NCBI GenBank assembly: GCA_964057225.1
Contig: OZ059898.1
Coordinates: 13,144,001 to 13,208,000, forward strand
DNA from: Auanema rhodensis
Lineage: Eukaryota; Animalia; Nematoda
Reading direction: 5' to 3'
Length of the DNA: 64,000 bases
Part shown: positions 15,243 to 35,635 of the stretch, one piece after another
Layout of the letters: every line of letters starts with the position of its first letter
How positions within the stretch are numbered: position 1 is the stretch's first letter
Translations under genes and position numbers: made by a program
Notes under the pieces: model-generated
What the model was told of the DNA's origin: nothing
The model's database searches: none
The model's input: the letters and a program-made list of their open reading frames with translations, nothing else

Positions 15243-18200
15243 GCTATGCGTTGATCTTCGCCTAGTAATAGGCTTTGGAGTTAAAACCTTCTGATTTGCT
15301 TGATCAAGAGGCTTCCTTCTCCGTTTCAGCCGGGAATGACTAGCCACAAATCTCAGCGGCTCTGAAATACATGAGAATGATTCGAAAAAAATTTAGAAAA
15401 CAATCTTTGTATTGACAAAACGGAAATGATTGAAAGTTTGATATGAGCAGATTGATTGAAACTGCTACTCGGAGGAGGAGTGATGATGATGATGATGGTG
15501 GTATTGCTGTTAGTGGTGAACATGAGCCAAGTGACTTTGAAGTGAATATCTCTCTTGATATCAGAAGAAAACATCAAGAGAATTTGACTCAATTTCACAA
15601 AAAATCTCATGAAGCGATGTAGGATCATTATCAAACGAAAAAAAAATTTTCAAATAGATAGCCAAAATGAACAACTTGCTCATCAACGTTGATGAAAAAA
15701 GTTTTAAAAATGGAGGTGAATGATGTTGCACGACGATCATTAATCAAGTTTACACACGTCAAAAAAAGGTTTTAAGCCTATATTTTTTGGCTCTTGGCTC
15801 TGGAAAGAAAGAGAATTTAACATAGAATCTGTCGATTTTGCAGTCTATTAGGAAGGAGAAGAAAGGGATGGTTGGACATTTCAACATAAATTCAGTTAGG
15901 TCAAAGGTTATCGTGCTTCAATCTGAGAAAATAAAATAATGATTAAGTTAATTATATAAATTATTATGTAAATTAATAAAAATAGCAATTAAATATAATA
16001 ATAATAATATTATTATTATTGTATTGAAGGCTTGTAATGTTTCAAAGATTTGGGCGATCTAGTGAGGAAAAACGAATGACATGACAGTGGATTTTCTGTT
16101 TGATTTTTATCTATGCTTATCCTTCAAATAACTGTTGCTCCATCCGTCATTAGCAAATTTCAAGAAAAGATTTTTTTCTCGCCGATGACGTCGTCATCGT
16201 TGTCGTGGTGTTCGTGATGCTCACAGTTATCATGCACGACTAATGGAGCACAGGAGAAAATCATCAGATGACAGATAAGAATAGATATAATATAGTTAAC
16301 TATAGCCATATAGTTAATAGACAAAAATAAAAAATTTAATTGAAGAGAAGAAATTGATGAAAATAAATATGTGAAACAGTGCATGTTGGTGCAAACGTCT
16401 TGGCAAATACAACATGTGTCATTAGTGGTGGAGATGGTGAAGACGGTGAGTGGTAAGGAAGAGAAGAAGGGAGGGAGGGCAGTTAGATGATCATAGAAAA
16501 AATTTTAAAATATGTTTCCGGACTTTTGCACTTAATTTTTTGAATTTTGTGAAGAAAAAATGACGAAGAAGCTAACAAGTAAGCTATAATAAGCAACAGA
16601 AGACCTATAGTTGTGGAGCTGGATAAATAGAGAAGATGATTGAGATTTGAAGACAAACAACAGTTTTTGAAAAAAAAAGGAGTAATCTACCTAAATGTTA
16701 TAAATATTATACATTATATAAGATTTATACATATTTATGTGTTAAAGACTTGTAAAAGAAAAAAGATGATCAGCTGTTTAAAGCTTGAAGAATGTTTTAG
16801 AAGTTGCATAAGGCTGTAGCTCTAGCTACGACATGTAGGTGTGAGCAGAGCCGAGGGAATATGATAGTTGAGTAGATTTGAAGAGTTAAGAGAGAATGAG
16901 AGACAACATCAAGAGATAGTGCACTAATTAGGTGAGAAGAAGAATGTTATTTAATGAAATGAAGACTAGTTCGGGGGAGAGAAGCAATTAGAATGAAAAA
17001 TCATATCTGGATGAGAGAAATGAAAAGAGCAACTCTTGGCTGCTCTACATTGGTGCTGGTTAAGGACTCACAGACTCTGATCCACAACACAGTGTGGCGA
17101 CAAGCTCTGATGTTCAAACAGAAGATTTCTAAAAGAAAGAAGAGATGGAGAGTGAACGAGATAAAGTCAACTCTACTGTCTGTCAGATAAAGCATCAAGA
17201 GCCAATAGAGCAAAGAAACGAAGAAAAGCAGAATATGCAGGAGAGATGGAGAGAAGGTGCAATACACAGATAGGGAACGGCAGATCGCTATTCGTCGTCG
17301 TCATAGTCTACATGAGCACAACAAGTGCAGAATGTTTCCCACATTGATGACAGATCAGATTTGGAAAAGTGTGAACAAGACGACGGATGTATAAAGGATA
17401 TGCTGAGGTGTGAAGAAAATAATTTTCAACTTGAAAAGGTTTGCTGATCCAACTTGTCGTCTATTGATGAATGAATAAGTATTGCTGAATGTGAACATAG
17501 AATGCGGTAAAGGAAGAATTGTGCATTACAATGAGAGGGAATAGGGAGAGGAAGAATAGAAGATGCTCCTTTGAGATGCAGATCTTGCGATCAGAATATT
17601 GATTTGAATGAACGTTTGAGAGTAGCAGAAGACGATGTTTGAATGGCCGATCAAATAAAATCTATGAGCTAGCTTGGTAGCAGTAGCATATGGGACACGT
17701 GTGCTCAATGGCTACATGGAACGCTTTTTGTGAATGAAAAATGTGATCAATGTATGATGGAATAAGCTGGTATTGGTGATAAGAGAGAAAAGATGAAGGA
17801 GAAAGAGAAGTGGAATGTTTCGTGGAGATGGTCCATGTCGGTGTTGTAATAATCGTCTGGTCACTCGGACCCCTCTCTCATTTCTTCTATTGTCAGCTTA
17901 GATATTAAGCAAGGTACAGAGAGAGCGAGATGATGAGAGAAATGAGGGAAAGTGAGAGAGAGATGATGAGCTCGATGAGCACGTGAGGCTGGTAGCAGAT
18001 TGAATGAATGAAGGATATGTAGGAGTTCAGGCTAGGCACAACGATTTCGTTGTTGGAGGGATAATGATGAAGATATAGGTGAAAGGAGAGAGTAGTGAAT
18101 AAGATGAAACTGATGTAGTGCGGGGTGAAGATGAACAGGTAACAGTTAGCATAGAATAGAGATGCTAAGTGGAGAGAGAGAGAGAGAGAGAGGGGGGAGA

Positions 18201-20284
18201 TGTCTGCATAGAAAAAGGAGAGTTAATGAAGAGAATGAGACAATGTTGTGGAAGATCTAATAAGATAGATATATAGATAGAAGAAGAGTAATGATGAGAA
18301 GGTGTTCCTTTACCGAGAGAAGAAGAAGCTTCTTTCTATTATTCATCAATTAAATATATCTTCTCTTTGAACCTGAGACGAAATGAATCAGCTTTTTCTC
18401 GCATCATTTCTTCTCAATTACCATATATGAACAAGAAATAGATATATGAATAGATCTATCTCTCTCTCTTTCTCTTTCTATCTTTCTCTCTTTCTCTCTC
18501 TATCTCTATCTTTCTGAAAAGCTCGTTAACCATATGTTGTTCGAAAAAATGAGAAAGAAAAAATATATAATTAAGATGATAAAGTGCAGTAATGGACATT
18601 AATATAATATATAAGATAGAAGCAAGTACAACCGCTCATAGTGTCAGCATTGACTCAAAATAAATATGTGTTTACGTGAAATTGGACGTATAATATGCTA
18701 ATGTGAGGAAACGTTTAAGCTTTTACCTGCCGTAATCTCCGTTTCATTTCTTAAGTTTTGAACAGAAAAAGTTGGAAAAAAAGCTTGTTATTGTTTTACA
18801 AAATTATAAATTACTTGGTGATTGACACAAATCATTCACCAAAGCTCAGTCATGAACAGATGCCCAGTGCACATGTATATAGCTTGCTCAAAACTTTATT
18901 TAAAACTTGTTTATTAATTTTCAACTATTTTAAGCTGATGTAATAAATAATTTGATTATTTCAAAGTTTGTAATAAAAAAATCAATTAAAACATGTACTT
19001 AATGAAGTGATAAGTATCAAATCTTCACCTGTCATTGTTATTTCAATTTCAAACAGTTTTTCAATCTTGTAAGTTCGATCAAGCATCAACTATCATTCTT
19101 ATCATAATATTTTTCAATTTTTGTCCAAAAATTTCTTTTTTTTTTCAATTTTTCAGTCAAGTTGTTGTATAAGGAGCATGTGTATAAACATTAATAAGCT
19201 AACATTGGCAAACAGTAGAATTTGACAAATGTGAAATGAAATATCAGTTGAAAATCTTTTATATAAACTATAATTGTATTATAATAAATATTTTATAATT
19301 AGAATAATTAGAAAATTATAATTTTCTTGCTGAGAAAATAAAAGAAAAACATTCTTACTTTGCTAAAGCCTTGAACTTTCCTTTATGGAAAGCGTACTGA
19401 CGATTTATGGACGAAATCAGTCGTTCGTTGGTCGTGAATCGTGTTGTTGGCGAAGACTAGCACTGATTATCTCATTGGATATGAGAGGAATGATGATGAC
19501 AGAACTGTTTTTTGCCCTCTCTCTCTCTCTATCTTCCTCTCCCTCTCCCCTCTCTCTCTCTATTCGATTTTGTATTTTTTTGCTTTTCTTCCAATAGTCT
19601 CTATCAATTGGCTTCCTCTCAAAGCTTCAAGCCGATCAAAGTTATCGGAGGTAAGCATAATGACGTTTGCTTGCTATTACTCGCAAAAGACAACAATTAA
19701 CAAGAAAGAAGTAAGATGTAAGATGTGATTAGAAAATATTTTCTTCATGAGAGTCTTCTTGTTAAAAATGAATATGATAACAAAGTATAAAGAGAAAAGA
19801 GGGGTATTGGAAGAGATTGAGAGAGTGAGAAAGAAAGAAAGAGGTAATGAGTCAAGGAGTGAAGCATTATGTCATCAAAAACTATTTGTGATGTTCTTTC
19901 TTCATTCTATAGTATTTAGCAGAACATCTTCACGTTAGACCTCGATAATCTCTGTTTCTCTCTTAATCTATTAACCACTTATCATCTCTCTCTCTCTCTT
20001 TCTCTTTCTCTCTTTCTGTATCTTTCCTATTGTTATAATAAAGAGAATTTTCCCCATAATTGGTTAACAACGTGGTCATGTTGATCAAACCTACTGTGAA
20101 GTATTATGGTCATTGGTTGATCAGTTATTTTCCTGTTTATAATAGAAAGAGGAACACGAAAAAGCTGACTATAAGTATAAAAAGTATTTGAAAAAAAGAT
20201 AAAATTTTAGAATATACACAGCACACCAAGTAAGTAAGTAAGTAACTAAGTAAGTAAGTAGAAGATAACTTTTGGAAATAATAT

Positions 20285-20339: not shown

Positions 20340-21596
20340 AGATTAGCTGTTGATAGAGTCAGCTTTTAAGCAGAGTTAAGAAAGATTAGAAAAAGTTAAC
20401 GTTAATCATATAGCAAGATATAATAATAATAAATGAATATAAAAATAAGATTTATGGAATAATCTAATGAACTTACTACATTTATTATGTATAATCTTCT
20501 GATAACGTCGCCATTTAGCCCTCAAGTAAAGACGAAATCGAAAAAAAGCCAAAGCTTGTACCATCTATATTCTGAAATAACATAAATTAGCGAAATCAGA
20601 TACATATAGTTAATAGATTATGAATAATACGAGAGAAATAAGGTAACTGTAAACAATAAAGCATTAGAATTCAAAGTGTTTCATGAAAATGAAAAGAAAA
20701 TATAAGAGATAGAGAGTGAAAAGTGAAAGCTTTATTAAGTTATAAAACGATCTTGTGGTGGTTTATAAACTAAACTTTGTGAGAATATGTGAGCGTATAT
20801 CCTATGTATGAATAATGTGGAAAGGAGAGCCGGAAATTGAAATCCATATTTTGGGGGTATCAGAACGGCTGAAATGATGTCCACTTCCCGTTTTACATGA
20901 AAAAGAAGTCTGTCTTGTGATGATGATGAGCATGGCTTCATTGATAACATTAATGTAATGATAGAAACGTTTTTGATGCCAAAAAAGTAATATAATTAGT
21001 ATAGTTTAGCTAAATTTTTACATATAATTTAATTAAATGGTAGGGTATGCTTATAAAGGGAAGGAGTGAGGGAGGGAGGGAGGGAGGGAGGGAGAGAGAG
21101 TGACAAACTAATCTGAATATATAATTTAAGTGCTCATTGCATTGAGTAGGCTAACACAGCCTTTTTTGAAAAAATAATAAATTCAAATTCTTTTCCAAGT
21201 TCTTTCAGCCCTTCCATATAAGCTGTCTGCCATCTGGAATAACAGAGCATCAATACTGAAAGTAAATTTTTAAAATGGAATGATTAAAAGAGTGAAGGGA
21301 TGGAGGTAGAGGGAAAGAGATAGAGGGGAAGTGTGAAGTAGTTGAAGAGTAGAAGAGAATGAAGGTTCTTCTACAGAATGAGCATATTCTCTCAACAGTT
21401 TATGAAGTACAACCGTTCTCAAGTGTTGAATCGAATGAAATGACGGAAATCTACGTGAGATATTCACGTCGTCTGTTTTTGGTGTTTAAGTGTGGATAGT
21501 GAAATGAACGAACAACAAAACTTCTGTCTGTTGGCCTTCTCATTGTGTATGTAACTAGCAATAGTGAGTAGAAATAAGAATTCATGAGAATAGCTC

Positions 21597-21737
<141 letters not shown>

Positions 21738-24700
21738 CCATCTGTGTTTATGTGTGTATGCTTGCCACAAAAAGCAGTAAGTGACTGGTCATCACACACG
21801 AATCTCATGACTTCACCCGGTCTTTTTCGAAAAAGATTCCTGAAGCTTGCTTAATGTTTTTCCTCATTCATTACTCCACACTACTAACCTCTCGTATTCC
21901 CATATTTTCAACTATTTCTTCAATATGTATCGCATCCGAATGCAGCTTTTTTTTCTTTTTAAAGCTTGTGACTCAATGAGCAGGTAAGGTGCTCGTTTGT
22001 CCACTTGCCCGTCGAATTTGAGAAATCTACCATGCATAATGGACGATCTATGCATGTCTACGTGTTTGTCAGTTTGTTCATTCTTCTGTTCCAACCATGA
22101 AACAATGGACGAAAATATTTTATATTTTCCATTCAAATTATAAGCATTTGAAGACGTTTTCTGGAAAAAAATAATAAAAAATAAAAGTTATTGCTATAAG
22201 GAATATAAAAAAATAAAAAAATAATATTGTAAAAATAGTACAGGATAAAGATATTAATATAAACTTAAGTTTAATCTTGAAAAGCCATGTGATCTCACTT
22301 GCTTTTCGCTCTCTCTCTCGCCTTCACCCTCTCTTTCGTGTTCGCGTCTTCCCCGTGGCTATTCAAATCAAAGTTATTGGGTTTTTGATATATAAGCTTG
22401 TTCTTATATTAATAAACGATTGGAAGAAATAAGAGGATAAGTGACTAGAAAAAATATTTGAGATGGAAATTATGAATTTTGGTCAAACGAAGTAAGTTAG
22501 AAGTACAGATTTGTGGACATTTATGATTCTCGAATACACTTTAAGAGAAAAATGTCTTGCAAGTATTGTTTTGCAAATGAAAATGAGAATGAGAAGAACG
22601 ACTGAGAGAGCAGTTTAAGAGAGAAAGATAGAAAGATTGAATGAGGTACCTGAATTAAGAAGCTATTTAACCATTGTTGAATGCAAAAATTAAATGAAGA
22701 AACGGGGGGTAACGTACATACAAGGAATGAAATCATGCTCTCTTAATCGAGACGGAGAAACATGAAAGAAGGCAAATGACTGAAGGAGGGATTATTGCCT
22801 GAGGGCTTAAAGAGTGGAACATAAAGGCAACAGGGGCTCTTATATCACATGAAGAATATTGGAAGAAGGATAGATGATAGTGAATACTTCATAAATCTCC
22901 TAACCATATGTAATCTAGTAAACATATAGCACTGAATGAGAGAGAGAGAGAGAGAGAGTTATGTATATTCGGAAGAGAAAGGTCAGACTATTAGTGCAAA
23001 TGTTATTTAAAAGAATTTTTTTTCTTTTTCTCATGACTGACTATGCCATTTGCCACTAATTTTGGCGGTGAAAATCGTTATAAACTTATAATTTTTTCAT
23101 ATTTTTAATAAAACAAAACGGAAAGAAATATGTTCTATCTGAGAAGAAAGGACGAAAAAAAGCTGACAAAAAGGAATCCAAGGATTAGTATTGACATACA
23201 GACCAAGTAAAGAGTGGATGTATTCACATGTACATACATAGTATATATAGTATGTTTGACGTAATAGTAGAAATACATAGATTTATACGTTTTTTAACCT
23301 CAACTATGCATGAATATAAACATATAATATAAATTTATTTAAGTAAGTAAGTAATACAAAACATTTATTCTGAATATTAAAAGTTCTTTTTAATATATTT
23401 TATTATATAATACTATACTATATACTATGCTATATAATTAATAATTGTTATATTATATTACCTATGTCTATATCTATATATAGAAGATATACTATATTGA
23501 TTTCATTCATTTTATTTAAATTTATTTTTTGAAAAAAAAAAAACTTTAGAGAAAAATATTTTAAAGAAAAAAAAATGAGATAAGAATTATAAATTAATAT
23601 TAAAATGTTGAAGATTATGTTTGACATCATCTATCAGCTGATTTAATTATATGTATAATTATATATTTTATTATAAATATATTTTTAAATAATCATTCTA
23701 TTATTATTCTTGTAATTCTTCTTCTTCTTTTTTTTTCTTCTTCTTTGGGCAAATATAAAAAAAAACGATCTAACATGAGAAAGATGATTCTAAACATTAT
23801 CATGAATTCGTAGAATTACATCGAAACATGTATATTCTTTTTCTTTTCTTTTTTGTTTTATTTTTCTAATTAAAACTATAAATTATATTTAATATTATAT
23901 TATAAAAATACACAGCTTAAACAACCGCACATGTGAAAGGTAATCAGTTGAAATGGATATGACGTGAAAATCACGTAAAATCACGTCAAATCAAGATATA
24001 TGCATGCTAATTTATTTTTTATTATTCATTATACTATGCATAGTAGTACTAAGTGAAAGTTTGTGATCTTGAGAACGAATATACTGAGCCTATGCACTTT
24101 TGCCTAGTTTCACCTCCTTTCCCCCCTTCTTCGTATCATTCTTTCTGCTTAATATTGCTCAGTATTCTATTCGATCACGTTTGCATACTTCCCTTCCAGT
24201 CTGATCTCTGGCTCAATTTGCTCATTTCTCCGCAAATTATCATCTTTGATTATCGAATAATATTTTTTTTGCTCAGACAGACAAGATAAATCATGAAAAT
24301 ATGCTATGAGTTGACGCCTTTCATCTGAGAATTAGCTGGATAACGTGAAATCAGCAAATATTACGGTTGTCATGTATATCAGACGCTGTCTACTGACGAC
24401 GTCGTCACTTTTTCTGTCTGTGAACGAACTAGAGCAGACGACGGTAAAGCAAGCTTTGTAGGCATGTTTTTCATTTTCCTACATCGTCAGTAGCAGTGGT
24501 TCTCGTCGCAGTGAAGGGAAAAACGGAGGGTAATGAAGCATGATGACAGGGAAATAGGGAGAGTGAAAGTCTGATGACGAAAGACTACGTCAAAACGGAC
24601 AGGGCGCATGTTGAAACAGGATAGACAACGGAAGGAAGCACAGAGCACATGTTGATATAAGAAAATGGTTGAAGACAGTGATAGAGAAGAGAGTATAGCT

Positions 24701-26456: not shown

Positions 26457-29281
26457 ATGGGGGCCATGTCACGTGCTAGTCTCGTACATGGTACGAATCA
26501 TAATCAGAATGATACATGGTTTGATGTAGATTCCTTCCTTCTAGTAAGTTATATTATATTTCAAGTTGTAAGCTTATTCATTCATATCGTATTCCAACTT
26601 ATTTCATTCACTTTCATTCTTTTTTTTACATTTTTAATGGAAATTTGATCGATAAATGCATTTTGATCAAGAAAAGCATTTTACCTGGAGTTTGGTTTCA
26701 AACATATGTTTCTTTCTTTATATAAGTACATTTGCGCACAAGTCGCATCTTATCCTGCTCATATTTCCATTCAAGCTCGTTATTCTTCTATCTCTTTGCC
26801 TCGTCATTCTGTCTTCTATGGGAGAAGAAGTGGACTAGTCGTCATTCCCTTTTTCTTCTGATTCTGATGCTAAAGCGTAGTAGTATGAAGCAGCAGCTTA
26901 AGCTGACGAAGAAACATAAGCAAGTAGGCAAAATCATGAAATATATGAAAAAGTGCCATTATGCTTGTCGATCAGTAGAAGCGAAAGATGCAACATACTT
27001 GTCTGTGTTGTTCCGGTATTTGACTTATGGATTAGTGAATGAGCAGAATGCCCATTGTTATCAGTTTCGATCACTGAAGCCTTGCTTATGAAAACCTTGT
27101 ATTCATCCAGCATAGTCTTAAGTCAATTCATCATTGTTCAGGTTGCAAAAGAGAAATTCAAAGTGGTTCATAAAGCTTCTGCTTGTTGACCTTGCTCTTG
27201 TCCATCTCACACAATTTCTCTTTCAATCTCCTTCACACAAAGAACTTTTTCACTTTTCGCATCACAATAACACATCAGTTGGATAGTGAAGAAGTCTATT
27301 TTTCTTCATCATCTCTTTCAATGTTATGAATTTATCCTTTTTCATTTCATCTTAATCATTTTTCTTTCACTTGCATCCACTAGAGACCATATCTGGTAGA
27401 TACATATTGGTCCAAAGTGTGTTAGAGCATTGAAAGAACAAACTGGATATCAATACGATAGAACCGAATCAAGAAGAATATCGTTTTGTTTTCATTTCAA
27501 GTAGATATTGAGAATTTTTGAACATTTAGTCGTCTTCCTCTTTTCCAAATGCTTCATGAGTTCAGAAGTTCACTTGTGGTTTTCACTCCTCAAACCAAGT
27601 AAGGTTACAGCTTTTCATCTTATTTTTTGTAATTTCTGAAGACAGCTCATCGTCTTATGCTGGTTATAAGTTTATTCTCTTCTTCAAAACAATCATAAAA
27701 ATGACTTGATAGATTTTGATTGAAGTTATAATAGAATAGGCAACAGGGTATTATGAGTAAGCTTGTTTCGGCCGATGACCAAGAACTTCTAAAACCTGCT
27801 CATATGCAAACAAATGCCATAATAGGAAGTCAAATTACTAGATTGTAAGTGGTCCAGATGACTCAACTTCTAGGTCTTTATAAGAACTTACATCAAACGT
27901 TCTCCATGTTTAATCTGTTGAGTGTTGAGGAGCCAAAGATTGATTTCATCGAGCAGAAAAACGTTTCTAGCATGATTTCTAATCATTTAAGATTAAAATA
28001 TTTTGTCGTTTCGACTAGTTTACGAGCAGCAAAATGAAGCTCACACATGCAGTTCCGTAAATTGAAACCAGTGAGTTAATCTGATTAGATCAACATTCTT
28101 CTCTTCTCATCATGAGTTCGGTTTCAAATAGAAACGTTTATAGTAGGTGTAGCTTACCCGATCGACAGTTCCGGTAATTTGGAGCGGAAGTGATGATAAG
28201 CTTGGCGATCTGTCAACAGCAGGTCTTGTCAGAACATACTTTCTGCTCACTACAATTAGTCTGTTCCTGCTCTTTGTCTTCAACATTCTCCGATCTCTCA
28301 TTATCTGTCCAGCAATTTCGGTCAGTTCTCTCGCTCGTTCGCTCTCCTTGTGCCCTCTGCAGCTCCTCTCTTCACTGAATGTTGTCGTTTTTCGCCAGGG
28401 GAGGGCCAATGCTGTCGCCGTCTATGCTGTTTTGTGCTGCTTCTGTTTATATTTGACCGATACTTCGTTTCGCTTTCGTTCTGCATCACATCTGCTCTCA
28501 TCTATACTCATAGTCTCTGCTCAAAACACACTATATCCGGGCATTCTTTCTCATTATTTGTATAAAGACCTCCAGTCTTTCTCCATGAAAATCGGCCGAT
28601 GACAAGCTAAGAGGGAAGAAAATATGGATACAAGGATGTATGAAAAGCGAAGGGGGAAACGGGATGAAGAAATTGTATTGTAGATTGGCGTACGATACAT
28701 AACCCTTGGGCATTTCTCATCCGCCGAAAGGTGAAAGAATACATGCTGTCGATCAAACTTTAAACAGTTTGCTCGCAATCGCCTATTCTCGTCTTCAAAT
28801 TCTGTATGAAAGAATGGGTCTCTAGAGGGAAGTGAAGATGGGTTTTCCGAGAAAAAAAAGTTTTTTGTGGAAAATATCTGGATTTTTGAATATATTCTTT
28901 CCTCTATAGTCTCATTTCATTTATCGTTTTTTCAATGTTTCATTGCAAACCCTTTACTCGATGGGGAGGGGGGAGGGACAACTGAAAGCTTTGTCAATAT
29001 TCAATTGCTATTCAGCCCTTTTTCTTCTGAAAACTGTATCTCAAAGAAATGTGACAATATTTCAGATTTTCCTTTATAAAATCATTGGAAGTAGTTGTGT
29101 ATAACAAGAATACTTGAGAAATTTTTATTTTCTATCGTAATGCTGATTGTGACTAGAAAATTGGTTCAGCTTCTTGACGTACGGTATTGGCAATTGGTGA
29201 CAACGGCTAGGCAGCTTAGAAAAACACTACAGAGCGCTGACTGTATGATATAACCAAGAGAAGAAAAACGAATAACGAAAA

Positions 29282-29324
<43 letters not shown>

Positions 29325-32300
29325 ATACAATTTGTGTATCTATGAGCATTTTGACGGACGAGAAGCTGAAGACCATCGTCCAGAAACCGGAACACATTCC
29401 GGAATTGCTTATATCATTTTTCCGTTAGCTCCTGTCTTTAAGTCCAATACACTAGCTATTGTATGTATATTAGTCGCAAACGATTGACGACTTATTAATT
29501 TGACGGCTTCAAACCGGTGTTAGATGAAAATGAGCATTTTTGATCAGGCTTTTTGTTAAATTATCGAATAATTTGAAAAGCTTGATTTATGCTTGAGTAA
29601 GGGTACAATTTAAACATAAATCTTAAAAATTATGAGGAAAATAAGCAACATGAAACATACCAATGACTAGATATACTTGACCCGAAACATCTTGTGCACG
29701 CACTTCTTCATTCAAATTTCATTTTTGCTTTTAAAGTCATGGGAAGCGGTTGTTCTCAAATTATTATAATGATTGGTAATATGCTAATGATGATTATGTT
29801 ATTTCAGGATCAAGCAAAGGAAGTTCTTAATAAGCTTATTGATGGATCAATTGATGATGAAATATGGGGAAAAATTGTTATTATGGAAAGGTAAAAAAGA
29901 AAGAATATTTCCTGTTATATTAAGTGTTATTCCTGCATTTACTGATGACGTATCTTTTGTCAAACATGCTGAATCATAGGTCTTTCTTTGATTTTGCCTG
30001 TTTATTTTTTGACCAAAAAAAAGTGTTCGACGAGAATTGACGAATGACGACTGAACAGTGATTTTTTATGATTTTTTTTAGATGTAAACGTGTTGCAAAG
30101 GCATATTTGCGTAAAACTACAGTGATCATTGATGGTTCAGAAGATGAATTTGATGGTAAAACATTAGGTTTTAATCATTTTGATAATCCGGAGAGAGATG
30201 AACATACATCTGAGATTCGAAGTAAAATAGGAGATGTACGTCCTTGATATCATATCTCATTATCTGTTGTTAACAAATTGCTTATAGGGAGTTATTTTGA
30301 AGATGGATCTTCAAGGAAATATTAAAGGAATGGCTAGAGGTAGTATGAACTTATCATCATTGTAATTACTTTAATATATAATGTTTAGGAGCAGCTCCAG
30401 TTATTACCCAAGGCTGGCGAAGTGATCGAACTAATTGTATTTCGGATCGCTTAATACGACAACAAGGTCGTCTAAATTCTGGTGAAGAAGAGAAATCCTA
30501 TAAGGTATTAATTATTATTTATAAACATACATATATCTAATAATCTTATATTTATTTTAAGATTTTTGATATGAAAAAGTTCAAATACTGCTTGGAACGA
30601 GAGCTACATGATGGTATGCCAGATGCTAAATCTCTTTTACTTAAGACTTGTATACGAGTTGCTTTGGTTAAGGTATGATTTCATAGATGAAAATGAAAAT
30701 AATCATTTGAATACAGGAAGGATCAGAAATGTCACGTACTCCTTGTTGGTTTGCTATTGTTAATCTAGTTGCTCTGGATATGTTACGTGAAAAAGTTCCA
30801 AACATCAGAAAATTAGGTATATTTAAACATTTAAATGAATTTTTATGAAAAGTTATAGTTAAAGTGGATAGTATGCCTGGAATGAGTTCAGCCTTATCAA
30901 CTTCAACATTAGCTCCATCAGGTCATAGCTCATCAGCAATCTCACAAGAAGCTTTGACCCAGATCATTGCTGCTGCTGTCAGTCAAGTTAATACAGGGTT
31001 TGATCAAGTAACTGTGATACTTTCAAATTATAATGCTTCAGACGATTACCAGTTACACCAGGAGAAATAGCTCAGTTAGCTAGTACATTGAATATGTCAA
31101 CTCTCAATGAAACTATTAGCAAATCAATAAGAACGTATGTTTATAATTTAATTATTTCAACGTTTTATTCAACTCTTTGTTTCAGAAATGATTTACCAAA
31201 ACGAAAACACTATCATTGCTCTTCCTCTTCATTAGATTCTTCTGGAGATGACACCAAAAAAGGAGGCAGAAGGTATAGCTTTCTTCTTCTTCTTTTTTTT
31301 TGGAAAAAATCATTTTCTGTTGCAGATGGGATGCTCAACAAAAGATTCATGATAGCTTTTATGACAGTGGAATTGAAAAATCTCGAGAAAAAGAGGTTGG
31401 TTTAGATAAGTTTTTATCTCATAATATCCTAATTATTATAGAAGAAGAAGCCAGGAAGATCAACAACAGCTTGTAGACCACGTTTGAGTGATGTCATGTT
31501 TACAAGAAGTCATTCTATTACATCTGATTATGATTCAAATCGTGAAGTATTTGATTCTGGAAGTTGGAGTTCCACAAATAGTCGAGGTTTCAAGGTGAGA
31601 TTAGCTGAACAAAGATGCTCCTTGATAATTTTCACATATATGATAGATCTTTTCACTTTTTTCACTATATTTTGAAGAGCACCTTAAATATTTCACTTCA
31701 ACTATATCATATAAAATCAATATTTATCTTTATTTTTTTGAAATACTTCAAATTATTTTAGGCTTGCTCAACTTCTTCTTCATTGGCTTCTGAATCAGAA
31801 CATGCTCACTCAGCTACAGATGAGGAACGGCATCGTAGTTCCGAGATCGAGAGACTAGATAATTCTCGGCACATTTATGAAGAAAATATTTCACGAAGTC
31901 AAAAGCAGGATATGGATGAATCAATATATTCTGCGGGTAAATCAACTGATTATCTTGCTACAAATTATCAAAAATTGATTATAACTGATATGGATGATAA
32001 CAATATTGACATATATGTATACATTCCTTTAATAGTTTGAAATTAACTATATACTAATTATTAATTCAAATGGAATGATTATCTAATCTATACTTTCAGC
32101 TAATTCTAACAATGAGCACGTGCCTGTTGCACCACCTCACGAACGATCGACAACAGAAATTCACATCGGATTACCAAACTCAACAGCGCAAACGGAGAAA
32201 GCATCAGCTTCCTCCATATCACAAATCACAAAATCTGATAAAGCTAATTATGATGATGACGTTGATGATGAAGCAAATCATATTGAAAAATCAATAGCTG

Positions 32301-34419
32301 ATTCTACATCAACATCTTCACGCAAATTATCAAGTAGTGGAAACGTAGAACGAATACGAGAAGCTTTATCCAGACGATCATCAATAGAATTTAAAAATGA
32401 AAATTCAACAACTCAAGGTATTAACATTTATATTTTTTTAAATAATTACAATAACAAATATCAGAAATTTATTTAATTTTAATAATATTTTTCACATAAA
32501 ATAATAAATAACATAAAACATTTAAACACAAAAATACTAATTTTAGCTCTAAAATTAATTATTTTAATCTTTTCATTTAAGTTTATAAGCTTACCGTTCT
32601 GTTTAATTATATTTTTCTCTAAAAATTACTAAAAACAATTTAATTTTAATTACTAAAATATTAAAATATAATAACAACACTAAGTTTATGTGTTTTTTTT
32701 TGAACTAATAATGATATTTGCTAAGCTTTTATAAATGCTTTTATGTTTTTCTTATGTTTCCTTTTAGATTCACATCAACATGCAATGACAAAGTAAGTTG
32801 CATGGCTTTTACATCAGTTTCCATTTGAACATCGAGCCTTGAACGAACCAAAAGATGCAGCTTCTTTTGCTATTTTCTCAAATTCAAACTTTACTGCTTA
32901 TCAATCAGCATATGTGTATCCGCTTTTACCTTAGTTATATATCAAACCATTACCCTCATGCTTTATCTGCATAGCTTATAGTAACCTTTTTTGATTTTTC
33001 TAGCTTGAATGGCTCTATGATGCTACGGAACCATGAGGTAACGCTTTCTTAATGCAAGCCCTATATGCTTCTTCTTCTTCTTTTTCATTTGTTTTGTTAT
33101 CCTTTGTGTTTCGCATGTGATCTAGCAAGCACCTTCAGCATATTGACACTGTTTAGATGGTTTTGCTGTGATTGATGGAGTTAAACCTGGTTTGCATTGT
33201 ATATTTTCAACGAAATTCATACGCATGTCTACTAACCTCTAATCATATTTTGCAAATTAGATTTTACTCAAATACAGCACGAATTCAGATGAGCATGTGT
33301 TTTTTTAATTTCATACTGTAAGTCAGCTTCATTTATTTTAGCAGCCAATTTACGAGGGTCGCAGCTCGAAGATGGAAAGCCAAGTCATCTACGAGCAAGG
33401 AATGCAACAGCAACATCAGCTCCCCCGTCATCCAGCGGCAATGCAAAATTCAAACCTCCGAAACAACTCGAAGAACGGATCGTCAGTCTCCAGAAAGCCT
33501 TTCTTCAACGAGCTCAGACAAGTATTTAACTGAGCTTATCAGGTCTGCTAACTGATATGTTTTCAGGTATTACATCAAAGATCCGACCCTCCGATGCGAA
33601 GAGGTGCGAACTCCTCAAATGGAACAAACCAGAAACTCGGAGAGACGATCAACGAACCTTCCAACCTGGTCATCGGACGCAATCCAGAGCTGGGGAGAGA
33701 ACCCCACAGACAACAGCAGAAGCAACATCAACAACATCAGCAGCAACGGGCGATGGACTCAAAGCCCATGCCAACAGCGAAATGTCAGTCCGGTCGCCCA
33801 CTCTCGATCGGAAACACCAACACTTGCGTCAACAACTCAATGGAATACAGCAGCCGAGACGGGACAGCGGCTCTGTACGGTACCGTCAGCCATTATGGAC
33901 AGATTCCAGGACGAGGACTTCGAAGAACCAGTACCAATATTGCACACTACGCAGGCCAGCAACAGCAGCAGCAGTCCACGAATCAGCCTCAACATCCAGC
34001 CTATCGATACCGATATTCAGCTCATCCAACAACTCCACCATATCAAGCCAGCAACAGCAGTACCAACAATCAGCTTGGAACACCCAGCAGTTCTGGAACG
34101 CACGTCACCTGCATGGCACAGTCCGCCACAACCGCAGTCGGACCATCAGCGGTCGGAGCATCCCGATTATTCAACAGCAAAGCTTCAACACCAACATCCT
34201 CGGCAGCAGCAGCTCACCGACTTACAAGAACAGCCTCACTGCCTTGGACCGGATCCACTCCATACCAACCTACTCACCACCAGCAACATCAACAACAACA
34301 ACCTGTACCTCCAGCGCACAACTCCATCTCCCAATATCCGAGACGAAACATATAACTCGTCTGATGGTCGATTGAACTTAGATGAGATATTTGATGATTT
34401 GCCGTCATTGAGCGTCTAA
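26457..34419 (+). CDS. Expansion/Rebuf-family atypical Smad (MH2-domain) protein, C34E11.2-like, with three alternative-frame C-termini (stops at 34355, 34375, 34419)
   Basis: Exon 26457-26543 splices to 29808 and gives DTWFDVDSFLLDQAKEVLNKLIDGSIDDEIWGKIVIMERCKRVAKAY..IDGSEDEFDGKTLGFNHFDNPERD..KIFDMKKFK..TPCWFAIVNLVALDML. This matches the Drosophila Expansion/Rebuf MH2 pattern. Canonical introns continue in frame to 32417. Confidence 0.85.
32768..32792 (+). CDS. Cassette microexon A (25 nt, shifts phase 1 to 2)
   Basis: cttttag|ATTCACATCAACATGCAATGACAAA|gtaagt, followed by TGCATG. Confidence 0.8.
33004..33037 (+). CDS. Cassette microexon B (34 nt, shifts phase 2 to 0)
   Basis: tttttctag|CTTGAATGGCTCTATGATGCTACGGAACCATGAG|gtaacg; reads open when it follows exon A, but hits a stop without A. 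Confidence 0.75.
33157..33189 (+). CDS. Possible cassette microexon C (33 nt, phase 1-1; DGFAVIDGVKP)
   Basis: gtttag|ATGGTT...AAACCTG|gtttgc; open only in phase 1. Confidence 0.5.
33342..34419 (+). CDS. Triple-frame-open penultimate (33342-33521) and terminal (33567-) exons
   Basis: No TAA/TAG/TGA in any forward frame over 966 spliced nt. The 45-nt intron between them (33522-33566) contains stops. NAGNAG acceptor at 33341/33344. Confidence 0.85.
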
Positions 34420-35635
34420 CGCATGTGTCCAGTATCTGAATGTCCAAAGTTGATTCGAGTTCCAAAATCCGTAGTTGTGAATATTTTCCGAAATTTTTAA
34501 AAAGAAAACCTCGTAGAAAGCAACATTTGCAACGAAAGTTATTTATCGTTATATAATATATATCATATAGTATTTGTTTTTATCTTCAAATAACTTATTA
34601 TATACGATATAGTTAACTAGATATACTATATATTACTTATCTCGATTGTTCAATCATCATTTTGCTCAAGCTTTCAGCCCGTATATGCTCTTACAGCAGC
34701 TTGTTAAACCTACCAACTTTCACGATCATCTTTTAAATAATATCTACCGTAACACCCAAGTGAGTAGACGCACCGACCAAACCACAATTACGGAATTTCG
34801 CCTTTCAGCATTGTTTCAGCTCTGCCTTCTTTCTGTAATTATTTGAAATTACTTTGCTTTGCTTTTAGTAGGTACTTCTAGTACTCAACTAGAAACATTT
34901 CTATTCCCTCTCTCTCTCCCTCTCTCTCTCTCTCCTTCTCCCTCTCTCCCTCTCCTCTAGAATACAAAAACGTCCTATATTCCTTCACTATTACCTATCT
35001 TCTAATATCTGAATTAGTATTAACACCCTATTATATTCTATACATAAAAATTATTTTCAAATCCATTTATCCGTCTTCTCTTTATATTTTTTTTAAATTT
35101 CGAAATATATTCCTAAACCTGTATCATAGGCCGGTTAAGAATGTTATTATATTTCTTTCGTATGCTTATCTGATATGTTCAAATGCTTTTTCTTTCAAAT
35201 TTTCTTTTTACATACATGTTTTCTTCTCCTAACATCAGAGGAAAATCTTTTTTTTTTTGTTTTTACTTTGTCTGTATATATGGTTCTTCTAATCTATATA
35301 TGTATATTTTATATAATTCATTATAATACTTGTAGAAATAATCATTGTTTTAATAAATATTTCGTTTAATTATCTATTTTAACTAATAATATATTTAAGA
35401 ATATTATTTTATCTTTAAAAGTTTCGTATTATCGATTGAAATTTAAAATATTTATATATGAGATAGCACGTCAAAAAAAATTTTGAATTTCTTTTCCCTG
35501 TTCATCATCGTGCGGTCGGTTTAGCATTCCATTTTCTACCGTTTTTTTTTTGATGTTCAACATCAAAATTCTCAAATATCAATTTGTTTTCTTTTTATTT
35601 CTTTTAATTATTTGATTTTAATTAGAATTAATTTA

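What the first reader, a model, noticed from the sequence alone, without database searches (positions are those of the whole stretch)
33342..34419. Triple-coded terminal exons: ~1 kb open in all three forward frames in an MH2-domain gene
Seen: exons 33342-33521 and 33567-34352 (966 spliced nt) contain no TAA/TAG/TGA in any forward frame. The 45-nt intron between them, the upstream exons and the antisense strand all have stops. The three stops then cluster within 67 nt (34355, 34375, 34419), all in the last exon, so none should trigger NMD. The region is also abruptly T-poor and C-rich compared with the rest of the gene. Tails counted from 33342 are 322 aa (QPIYEG..KPFFNELRQVLHQR..YPRRNI*), 329 aa (..FKPPKQLEERIVSLQKAFLQRA..RLMVD*) and 344 aa (..DRFQDEDFEEPVP..LNLDEIFDDLPSLSV*). 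My rough estimate from composition is that a couple of dozen off-frame stops would be expected by chance. Known: dual-coding exons exist (GNAS/ALEX, INK4a/ARF, XBP1), but I know of no long triple-coded exon in the Expansion/Rebuf family. Inference: one stretch of DNA encodes three different C-terminal proteins under selection.
Basis: partly seen in the sequence, partly recalled or inferred. Interest (0 to 1): 0.95.

Follow-up and report, generated by a model that had tools for sequence, protein, structure and literature searches.

The report
Triple-coded tail chosen by two microexons
The last ~1 kb of a nematode Expansion/Rebuf-type (MH2) gene is kept open in all three reading frames, and two tiny optional exons upstream decide which frame is read, so one stretch of DNA gives three different protein tails; the arrangement is conserved in other nematodes and is annotated, but not described as triple coding in any paper I could search, in C. 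elegans C34E11.2.

Summary
Exons 33342-33521 and 33567-34352 (966 spliced nt) have no stop in any forward frame. Shuffles that keep dinucleotides or codons expect 16-20 stops and never gave fewer than 4.

The gene is the orthologue of C. elegans C34E11.2 (Exp/Reb family).
- **Frame choice.** The 924-nt intron before the region holds two cassette microexons, A (32768-32792, 25 nt) and B (33004-33037, 34 nt). Both lengths are 1 mod 3. Skipping both, including A, or including A+B gives the three frames. B alone gives an immediate stop.
- **Conservation.** The same layout is found in Auanema sp. JU1783 and four Caenorhabditis species, always with microexon lengths of 1 mod 3. The triple-open tails there are 357-855 nt.
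- **C. elegans.** Five RefSeq isoforms read the same exons in all three frames. Published RNA-seq lists cassette B as non-triplet and NMD-resistant.
- **Selection.** Each frame has a motif kept through synonymous codon changes. Only the A+B frame shows pN/pS below 1 over the whole tail.

No transcript data exist for the window's own species. This is a new, unusually long member of the known class of splicing-derived triple-coding regions.

The parts
26466..26543 (+). First coding exon of the gene (MSRASLVHG..DSFLL)
   Evidence: tblastn of Auanema sp. JU1783 protein P0003, residues 1-26, 88% identity.
30082..30236 (+). Exon of the N-terminal MH2 domain (CKRVAKAYLRK..SKIGD)
   Evidence: Pfam PF03166 MH2, E = 2.6e-7, 31.5 bits against a cutoff of 25. 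It is 92% identical to P0003.
32100..32417 (+). Exon N, the last constitutive exon before the frame choice. It ends in phase 1 (..ACT CAA G|gtatta).
   Evidence: Read directly from the sequence. The same phase-1 'G|gt' exon end is seen in JU1783 and three Caenorhabditis species; the C. auriculariae exon end was read from the sequence as ..GTCG|GTAGGT.
32768..32792 (+). Microexon A, 25 nt (+1 frame shift). Sequence: ccttttag|ATTCAC..ACAAA|gtaagtt. Encodes DSHQHAMT.
   Evidence: Found in the splice-site scan. The homologous 25-nt exon is part of annotated protein P0003 in JU1783 (DAHHQQMP). About 35 nt upstream and 17 nt downstream are nearly identical between the two Auanema species, in an otherwise unalignable intron.
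32799..32804 (+). UGCAUG (RBFOX/ASD-1/FOX-1-type motif), 7 nt downstream of microexon A
   Evidence: Conserved at the same place in JU1783. One copy also lies 16 nt after microexon A in C. auriculariae. Absent from the C. elegans, C. briggsae and C. remanei introns. Its function is not tested.
33004..33037 (+). Microexon B, 34 nt (+1 frame shift). Sequence: tttttctag|CTTGAATGGCTC..CATGAG|gtaacgc. After A it reads NLNGSMMLRNHE. Without A it gives GCT TGA, an immediate stop.
   Evidence: JU1783 has a 34-nt homologue (NLNGSEPHRSHE). C. auriculariae has a 37-nt homologue that starts with the same CTTGAATGGC. C. elegans exon B (43 nt) is a cassette seen in RNA-seq.
33342..33521 (+). Exon P, open in all three frames. 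A tandem acceptor (tagCAG|) also allows a start at 33345.
   Evidence: JU1783 uses the acceptor equivalent to 33345.
33349..33378 (+). Motif FTRVAARRWK, specific to frame t1 (microexon A only)
   Evidence: 8 of 10 residues are invariant in six species, and 7 of those 8 have varying codons (for example R = AGG/AGA/CGC). The other two readings of the same DNA are not conserved.
33501..33581 (+). Motif FFNELRQ|VLHQR, specific to frame t2 (A+B). It spans the 45-nt intron 33522-33566.
   Evidence: 8 of 12 residues are invariant in six species, 6 of them with varying codons. The motif is also present in Mesorhabditis and Steinernema proteins.
33567..34419 (+). Coding part of the terminal exon. Triple-open up to 34352. 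Stops: t2 TAA 34353-34355, t3 TGA 34373-34375, t1 TAA 34417-34419.
   Evidence: In all six species the t3 stop lies exactly 20 nt after the t2 stop.
33912..33926 (+). t2 motif RGLRR
   Evidence: 5 of 5 residues invariant in six species, all with varying codons.
34218..34247 (+). t2 motif RLTRTASLPW
   Evidence: 7 of 10 residues invariant, 6 of them with varying codons.
34340..34375 (+). C-terminus of frame t3 (no microexon): ETKHITRLMVD*
   Evidence: The pattern E..H[VI]..L..* is kept in Caenorhabditis with synonymous turnover, downstream of the t2 stop. The Toxocara canis orthologue ends in EHITRLVVD*.
34363..34419 (+). C-terminal extension of frame t1: DGRLNLDEIFDDLPSLSV*
   Evidence: Between the window and JU1783 there are four synonymous differences and one I/L difference. 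It is absent from the Caenorhabditis t1 tails.

Best explanation
**What it is.** This is a real triple-coded C-terminal region of the nematode Expansion/Rebuf-family gene, the orthologue of C. elegans C34E11.2. It is read in three frames through alternative splicing.

**How the frame is chosen.** Exon N ends one base into a codon. The following 924-nt intron holds two cassette microexons, A (25 nt) and B (34 nt), each of which shifts the frame by +1.
- Skipping both joins N to exon P in frame t3 (ANLRGS..HITRLMVD*).
- Including A gives frame t1 (..SQFTRVAARRWK..DEIFDDLPSLSV*).
- Including A and B gives frame t2 (..QPIYEG..PFFNELRQVLHQR..RGLRRT..SLPW..PRRNI*).
- B alone gives an immediate stop.

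**What is kept.** Exon P and the terminal exon are held free of stops in all three frames, mainly by a shortage of T and by avoiding TAA, TAG and TGA. The three stops cluster in the last exon, so no isoform should be an NMD target.

**Products.** Three proteins share the N-terminal MH2 domain and linker. Each carries a different hydrophilic tail of about 330-350 aa that is probably disordered and has its own short conserved motifs.

**Shown versus inferred.**
- Shown: the open frames, conservation of the layout, use of all three frames in C. elegans gene models, alternative splicing of cassette B in C. elegans, and frame-specific motif conservation.
- Inferred: that the same three mRNAs and proteins are made in the window's species, and what each tail does.
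For: **Open frames.** 0 stops against 16-20 expected. The run is an outlier in the window.

**Orthology.** An MH2 Pfam hit. The best relatives are Auanema sp. JU1783 P0003 and Caenorhabditis MH2 proteins. C34E11.2 is placed with Exp/Reb in PMC6176944.

**C. elegans isoforms.** P0163, P0005/P0160 and P0161/P0162 map exactly to the same exons P, Q and R in three frames. They differ by skipping both microexons, including A (43 nt), or including A and B (43 + 43 nt).

**Transcript evidence.** Source data of PMC13247117 list the C34E11.2 cassette X:11807745-11807787, which is exon B. It is called non-triplet and NMD-resistant, with dPSI -0.05.

**Microexon lengths (A/B).** 25/34 in the window and JU1783, 25/37 in C. 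auriculariae, and 43/43 in C. elegans, C. briggsae and C. remanei. All are 1 mod 3, and B alone is non-productive in every species.

**Triple-open tails.** 966, 855, 462, 414, 540 and 357 nt in the six species, and 507 nt in Mesorhabditis. P(0 stops) is at most 0.003 for each.

**Independent annotations pick different frames** in C. briggsae, C. remanei, C. auriculariae and JU1783.

**Suppressed synonymous change.** Among C. elegans, C. briggsae and C. remanei, the t2 wobble position varies at 21% of codons in the tail, against 60% in the upstream exons of the same gene. pS is 0.17-0.30 in the tail against 0.62-0.70 upstream.

**Frame-specific motifs with synonymous turnover** exist for t1, t2 and t3.

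**Stop avoidance.** Random placement of the observed Auanema substitutions would create about 7.5 stops in t1 and 9.5 in t3. None is observed.

**Steinernema.** Two S. hermaphroditum isoforms are consistent overlapping-frame readings over 205 residues.
Against: - No RNA or peptide data exist for the window's species. The three splice patterns there are inferred from conservation.
- Over the whole tail, pN/pS is below 1 only for t2 (0.24-0.57). For t1 it is 0.96-1.95 and for t3 0.91-1.16. These are lower than the 2.0-3.9 seen for off-frames of single-coded exons, but they are not by themselves proof of protein-level selection.
- The t1 C-terminus is not conserved between Auanema and Caenorhabditis. 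In C. briggsae t1 stops earlier than in the other species.
- In the Auanema pair, synonymous divergence in the tail is only slightly reduced: 39% of wobble sites vary, against 47% upstream.
- The RNA-seq paper lists only cassette B and classes it as 'C-terminal length', not dual coding. I did not see direct read evidence for the skip-both isoform.
Confidence: 0.82

Rival explanations
1. Only the A+B frame (t2) makes a functional tail. The other two splice forms are tolerated by-products. Their frames are kept open only so that the products are neither truncated nor degraded. Selection would then act on openness, not on the t1 and t3 sequences.
For: Tail-wide pN/pS is about 1 for t1 and t3. t2 carries most of the cross-genus invariant columns, 32 against 13 and 16. 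The t1 end differs between genera, and t1 stops early in C. briggsae.
Against: The t1 motif FTRxxARRWK is invariant at 8 of 10 positions in six species, with 7 codon-variable positions, while t2 and t3 read non-conserved peptides from the same DNA. The t3 end lies past the t2 stop, is conserved with synonymous changes, and its stop is always 20 nt after the t2 stop. The Auanema t1 extension differs by four synonymous changes and one I/L change. Keeping 0.4-1 kb open in two extra frames in at least seven species is itself costly.
Confidence: 0.12
2. The stop-free state is a by-product of a T-poor, Q/S/T/P-rich low-complexity coding sequence, that is, of composition or repeat origin, with no relation to translation in other frames.
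For: The region is T-poor (15%) and rich in CAA/CAG/AGC/ACC-type codons.
Against: Shuffles that keep dinucleotide or codon composition still expect 16-20 stops and never gave fewer than 4. The property is conserved across species whose tails are largely unalignable. C. elegans gene models use all three frames. The Toxocara orthologue has an ordinary last exon with 0, 14 and 28 stops in the three frames.
Confidence: 0.02
3. A constraint at the RNA level, such as structure, splicing enhancers, or avoidance of UAA/UAG/UGA-containing protein-binding or cryptic 5' splice sites in a long exon, removes stop triplets and lowers synonymous change without multi-frame translation.
For: Synonymous change is suppressed in Caenorhabditis. 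GTAAG and GTGAG donor-like sequences contain stop triplets.
Against: It does not explain the conserved 1-mod-3 microexon pair, the annotated isoforms in three frames, the peptide motifs kept through synonymous changes in each frame, or the fixed 20-nt spacing of the t2 and t3 stops.
Confidence: 0.04

Closest known systems
C. elegans C34E11.2 (Exp/Reb-family MH2 gene), RefSeq/WormBase isoforms
   Same: It is the direct orthologue. Exon N ends in phase 1, followed by two cassette microexons of 1 mod 3 and terminal exons read in three frames. Cassette B is alternatively spliced and NMD-resistant in RNA-seq.
   Different: The microexons are 43 and 43 nt instead of 25 and 34. The tail is split into three exons. 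Only about 462 nt are triple-open, against 966. t1 ends before t2 and lacks the DEIFDDLPSLSV end. No searchable paper describes the triple coding.
Vertebrate triple-coding regions made by alternative splicing (SH2B1, CCSER2, ATP2B1 and others; bioRxiv 10.64898/2026.05.28.727796)
   Same: Inserted exons or exon extensions whose length is not a multiple of three shift the frame of a shared terminal exon. This gives different C-termini, with selection detectable in more than one frame.
   Different: The genes are unrelated. The conserved vertebrate overlaps are described there as short. Here 0.36-1 kb is involved, and the frame is set by two consecutive +1 microexons.
C. elegans dual-coding isoforms from non-triplet microexons, for example tnt-3 (PMC13247117)
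   Same: A non-triplet microexon chooses the frame of a downstream shared region. The isoforms are NMD-resistant, and the recoded regions tend to be disordered.
   Different: Those cases have two frames, with 83 recoded residues in tnt-3. Here there are three frames and 320-350 residues each.
Human SRD5A1 triple coding (PMC13352861); GNAS XLas/ALEX; INK4a/ARF
   Same: One nucleotide stretch is translated in more than one frame into long polypeptides (GNAS and INK4a from general knowledge).
   Different: The frame is chosen by alternative start codons or alternative first exons, not by cassette microexons before a shared 3' end.
Drosophila Expansion and Rebuf
   Same: An N-terminal N-alpha-MH2 domain followed by a variable, non-domain C-terminal region.
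   Different: No multi-frame tail is reported for the fly genes, and I did not examine fly DNA. The fly proteins act in chitin deposition, while the function of the nematode gene is uncharacterised.

Membership tests
Expansion/Rebuf (N-terminal MH2, Smad-like) family | An MH2-type domain near the N-terminus | tested here: met
   Pfam PF03166 on exon 30062-30244, E = 2.6e-7, above the gathering score. All orthologues carry PF03166.
Expansion/Rebuf (N-terminal MH2, Smad-like) family | Orthology to the recognised nematode member, C34E11.2 | tested here: met
   The JU1783 orthologue P0003, which is 92% identical to the window's MH2 exon, matches the C. elegans protein at E = 8.7e-153 and 59% identity. 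The exon layout of the tail is shared. The locus coordinates coincide with the C34E11.2 event in PMC13247117. C34E11.2c is grouped with Exp/Reb in PMC6176944.
Expansion/Rebuf (N-terminal MH2, Smad-like) family | A variable C-terminal region without known domains | tested here: met
   No Pfam family was found on any of the three tail readings at E up to 1. The composition is hydrophilic and rich in S, T, Q and P.
Splicing-derived multi-frame (triple) coding region | The same nucleotides are open in three frames over a length far beyond chance | tested here: met
   966 nt with 0 stops against 16-20 expected. Conserved in six further loci.
Splicing-derived multi-frame (triple) coding region | Alternative splice events whose lengths are not multiples of three place the shared exons in each frame | tested here: met
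   Microexons A and B are both 1 mod 3 in six species. In C. elegans the exact isoform maps show none, A and A+B.
Splicing-derived multi-frame (triple) coding region | Transcripts for each frame exist in vivo | tested here: inconclusive
   Shown only for the C. elegans orthologue: RefSeq isoforms for all three frames and RNA-seq for cassette B. The JU1783 annotation includes microexon A. There are no data for the window's species.
Splicing-derived multi-frame (triple) coding region | Purifying selection on each frame | tested here: inconclusive
   Met locally, with a frame-specific motif showing synonymous turnover in each frame and stop avoidance in t1 and t3. Tail-wide pN/pS is below 1 only for t2.
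Splicing-derived multi-frame (triple) coding region | Proteins from each frame are detected | not testable with these tools

The most novel reading that the evidence does not exclude
All three tails are functional proteins. A two-microexon '+1, +1' counter has selected among them since before Caenorhabditis, Auanema and probably Mesorhabditis diverged, with at least dual coding reaching Steinernema. Splicing of microexon A is tissue-regulated, possibly by RBFOX-type factors through the conserved UGCAUG just after it in Auanema. This would be an exceptionally long animal triple-coding region (0.4-1 kb), sitting in a genetically tractable uncharacterised gene of the Exp/Reb family.
Probability: 0.5. 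Interest if true: 0.75.

Novelty: new member of a known kind. Interest (0 to 1): 0.6.

Why it matters
Long regions under selection in three overlapping frames are rare. They constrain how sequences can evolve, because every base is a wobble position for only one frame.

This case is unusually long and conserved across nematode genera. It has a simple, readable mechanism: two optional microexons act as a frame counter. It also has an orthologue in C. elegans, where isoform-specific stops, tags, reporters and ribosome profiling are routine. That makes it a practical model for two questions: how triple coding arises and is maintained, and what different disordered tails on one MH2 domain do.

It is also a warning for annotation. 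Automatic gene models in related species each chose a different frame, and one (C. japonica) is a chimera of two frames.

Tried and rejected
- **Tail search found nothing new.** The search for homologous proteins with the JU1783 tail (P0003:545-853) returned only P0003 itself, so tails had to be compared through loci.
- **Some loci could not be fetched.** The look-up of encoding contigs failed for P0005, P0160, P0181 and P0009, because only the longest product per gene is on record. I therefore have no Steinernema DNA. I used a back-translation consistency test instead.
- My first JU1783 coordinates for microexon A were off by one and gave a wrong t1 reading. This was corrected.
- **Timed-out run.** The first stop-creation simulation with rejection sampling timed out. 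It was rerun without rejection. In that run the Caenorhabditis t1 figures include stops that already exist after the natural t1 stop, so only the Auanema figures are clean.
- **Rejected alternative start.** An apparent start MGSGCSQ.. (about 29740) reading into the DQAKEVL exon is not open in JU1783 or C. elegans, so I rejected it.
- **Mesorhabditis.** No FTRxxARRWK motif and no clear homologues of A or B were found. Its triple-open tail is therefore recorded without a mechanism.
- **One coordinate mismatch.** The fourth coordinate of the PMC13247117 event ID is one base off my position for the end of exon A. The other three fit exactly. I treat this as a difference in coordinate convention.
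- **Not attempted.** Structure prediction of the tails (expected to be disordered) and a test for RNA-structure covariation.
Full report
**1. The observation**

I read 32400-35000 and counted stop triplets by frame.
- Exons 33342-33521 and 33567-34352 have no TAA, TAG or TGA in any forward frame.
- Between them, forward stops occur only inside the 45-nt intron (33527, 33531, 33549, 33553).
- The antisense strand has 18-30 stops per frame over 33200-34500.
- The three frames end at TAA 34353-55, TGA 34373-75 and TAA 34417-19.

The composition is A .33, C .33, G .20, T .15. Upstream exons of the same gene have T .23-.30 and C .10-.22, and T jumps back to .36 directly after the first stop.

Composition does not explain the result.
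- Dinucleotide-preserving shuffles give 19.9 +/- 3.1 stops, with a minimum of 9 in 5000.
- Codon shuffles in each frame give 16.5-19.3 off-frame stops, with minima of 4-7 in 20000.
- The 800-nt all-frame open run is the longest in the window. The adjacent exon (188 nt) is second and the next unrelated run is 187 nt.
- Upstream coding exons of the orthologues carry 3-6 off-frame stops per 100 nt. That is at the shuffle mean in four species and 2-2.5 sd below it in two, so the null is roughly calibrated.

**2. The gene**

An upstream exon (30062-30244) hits Pfam MH2. A profile-free search of 1.8 billion representative proteins with that exon found nematode MH2 proteins. The closest is P0003 from Auanema sp. 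JU1783 at 92% identity. Others come from C. elegans, C. remanei, Mesorhabditis, Steinernema and further species.

The C. elegans locus (L003, X:11803458-11817153) is C34E11.2. A splicing event labelled C34E11.2 in the source data of PMC13247117 has the coordinates of one of its exons. PMC6176944 groups C34E11.2c with Drosophila Expansion and Rebuf. The window therefore holds the orthologue from an Auanema-like rhabditid. Its first coding exon lies at about 26466-26543.

**3. The frame-selecting microexons**

Exon N (32100-32417) ends one base into a codon. A scan of the 924-nt intron for acceptor-donor pairs found two small exons:
- A, 32768-32792, 25 nt.
- B, 33004-33037, 34 nt.

The arithmetic and translations give:
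- Skipping both gives frame t3 (ANLRGS..RLMVD*).
- A alone gives t1 (DSHQHAMT-N-SQFTRVAARRWK..PSLSV*).
- A+B gives t2 (..NLNGSMMLRNHE-QPIYEG..PRRNI*).
- B alone gives GCT TGA.

I tested it independently.
- In JU1783 (L001) the annotated protein P0003 contains the homologue of A (DAHHQQMP) and continues in t1 to DGRLNLDELFDDLPSLSV*.
- JU1783 also has a 34-nt homologue of B that starts with the same CTTGAATGGCTC and reads NLNGSEPHRSHE after A.
- The intron is otherwise unalignable between the two Auanema species. Islands around A and B are nearly identical, including UGCAUG 7 nt after A.

**4. C. elegans uses all three frames**

Five RefSeq/WormBase isoforms have three different C-terminal tails. 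Exact mapping shows the following.
- Exon N ends in phase 1.
- A is 9238-9280 (43 nt) and B is 9367-9409 (43 nt).
- The shared exons P (114 nt), Q (330 nt) and R are read in three frames.
- P0163 skips both microexons (t3). P0005 and P0160 include A (t1). P0161 and P0162 include A+B (t2).

Cassette B is listed as a non-triplet, NMD-resistant cassette (dPSI -0.05) in RNA-seq of wild type against smg-1. There it is classed as 'C-terminal length'. No searchable paper describes triple coding in this gene.

**5. Conservation of the layout**

I fetched loci for C. remanei, C. briggsae, C. auriculariae, Mesorhabditis spiculigera and Toxocara canis.

| Species | Microexon A / B (nt) | Triple-open spliced tail (nt) |
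|---|---|---|
| Window | 25 / 34 | 966 |
| Auanema sp. JU1783 | 25 / 34 | 855 |
| C. elegans | 43 / 43 | 462 |
| C. briggsae | 43 / 43 | 414 |
| C. remanei | 43 / 43 | 540 |
| C. auriculariae | 25 / 37 | 357 |
| Mesorhabditis spiculigera | not found | 507 |

- Both microexons are always 1 mod 3, and B alone is non-productive everywhere.
- For the six species with microexons, codon shuffles give P(0 stops) of at most 0.003 each, and the t3 stop is always exactly 20 nt after the t2 stop.
- In Mesorhabditis the tail has 0 off-frame stops against 5.7 expected (P = 0.0002). I found no A or B homologues there.
- Independent gene models chose different frames: C. briggsae t2 and t3, C. remanei t3 and t1, C. 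auriculariae t2, JU1783 t1. The C. japonica model is a t1/t2 chimera.
- Two Steinernema hermaphroditum isoforms differ by an NLNG.. microexon. Their 205-residue tails can be back-translated to a single DNA sequence read in two frames over the full length.
- The Toxocara orthologue has an ordinary last exon with 0, 14 and 28 stops in the three frames. It nevertheless ends in EHITRLVVD*, like the Auanema t3 end HITRLMVD*.

**6. Selection**

*Caenorhabditis trio (C. elegans, C. briggsae, C. remanei).*
- In the tail, sites vary at 12%, 13% and 21% of codons for t2 positions 1, 2 and 3.
- In the upstream exons of the same gene the figures are 11%, 5% and 60%. Fourfold sites vary at 72%.
- Pairwise pS in t2 is 0.17-0.30 in the tail against 0.62-0.70 upstream.
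- pN/pS is 0.24-0.46 for t2, 1.2-1.95 for t1 and 0.9-1.1 for t3. Off-frames of the single-coded upstream exons give 2.0-3.9.
- Synonymous change is therefore strongly suppressed and the off-frames are less 'non-synonymous' than expected. Only t2 shows tail-wide purifying selection.

*Auanema pair.* The tail is more diverged (33% of aligned bases) and its wobble positions are only slightly protected, 39% against 47% upstream. If the 277 observed substitutions are redistributed among sites with the same base and phase, they create about 7.5 stops in t1 and 9.5 in t3. None is observed, and no run out of 1500 gave zero.

*Motifs*. Each frame is kept through synonymous change.

| Frame | Motif | Invariant residues (six species) | With varying codons |
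|---|---|---|---|
| t1 | FTRxxARRWK | 8 of 10 | 7 |
| t2 | FxxELRQVLxxR | 8 of 12 | 6 |
| t2 | RGLRR | 5 of 5 | 5 |
| t2 | RxxRTxSLPW | 7 of 10 | 6 |

- For the t1 motif, the other two readings of the same DNA are not conserved.
- The t3 C-terminal pattern E..H[VI]..L..* lies beyond the t2 stop. In Caenorhabditis its V, I and L codons vary synonymously.
- The Auanema t1 extension DGRLNLDE[IL]FDDLPSLSV* differs by four synonymous changes and one I/L change.

**7. Mechanism and properties**

The best reading is a two-microexon frame counter placed in front of a shared, triple-open 3' end.

All three tails are hydrophilic and rich in S, T, Q, P, R and N, with no Pfam domain. In the window t2 and t3 are basic (+19 and +25) and t1 is slightly acidic. 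They are probably disordered regions that carry different short motifs behind one MH2 domain. What the tails do is unknown. The fly relatives act in chitin deposition and apical localisation, but the nematode gene is uncharacterised.

**8. Comparison and novelty**

Triple-coding regions produced by alternative splicing are known in vertebrates (SH2B1, CCSER2, ATP2B1 and others). Non-triplet microexons that set the frame of dual-coded regions are known in C. elegans (tnt-3). This locus belongs to that kind.

The new points are:
- explicit recognition of triple coding in the Exp/Reb gene of nematodes;
- its length, 0.36-1 kb;
- the tandem +1/+1 microexon design;
- its conservation across Rhabditina, with at least dual coding in Steinernema.

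The C. elegans gene models already contain the isoforms, so I rate it as a new member of a known kind.

Noticed in passing
window 32799-32804; L001 7451-7456; L005 8495: UGCAUG (RBFOX/ASD-1/FOX-1-type site) lies 7 nt after microexon A. It is conserved in both Auanema species, and one copy lies 16 nt after A in C. auriculariae. None occurs in the corresponding introns of C. elegans, C. briggsae or C. remanei.
   Followed up: partly
window 33336-33347: Tandem NAGNAG-type acceptor (ttttagCAG|CC) at the start of exon P. JU1783 has only the downstream site. Either choice keeps the frame and adds or removes one codon.
   Followed up: partly
L007 (Toxocara canis) 17522-18655: The last exon of the ascarid orthologue is single-coded, with 0, 14 and 28 stops in the three frames. 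It nevertheless ends in EHITRLVVD*, close to the Auanema t3 end (E[TA]KHI[TI]RLMVD*). The no-microexon frame may therefore carry the ancestral C-terminus.
   Followed up: partly
proteins P0009 and P0181 (Steinernema hermaphroditum): Two annotated isoforms differ by an NLNGDTIQRNVQ microexon. Their 205-residue tails are fully consistent with one DNA sequence read in two frames. The DNA could not be fetched.
   Followed up: partly
L006 (Mesorhabditis spiculigera) 12164-13150: The four tail exons (507 nt spliced) have no off-frame stop, against 5.7 expected. No A or B microexon homologue and no FTRxxARRWK motif was found, and the gene model is partial.
   Followed up: partly
protein P0169 (C. japonica): The gene model reads exon P in t1 (GSFTRAAARRWK) and then switches to t2 (VLEQRTNG..RGLRRT..SLPW). 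It is probably a prediction artefact caused by the triple-open exons.
   Followed up: no
window 29740-29891: An ORF starting MGSGCSQ (a myristoylation-like start) reads without a stop into the DQAKEVL exon. The equivalent stretch has stops in JU1783 and C. elegans, so it is probably not a real alternative start.
   Followed up: yes
window 21585-21777: A stretch of about 165-190 nt is free of stop triplets in all frames on both strands, well upstream of the gene's first coding exon at 26466. It was not examined.
   Followed up: no
L003 7922-8203; L004 9342-9605; L002 7271-7540: In Caenorhabditis, a further frame-preserving optional exon (282 nt in C. elegans; DDEPPTNPP..) lies between exon N and microexon A. 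It combines freely with the tails in the C. elegans isoforms. I did not look for a counterpart in the window.
   Followed up: no
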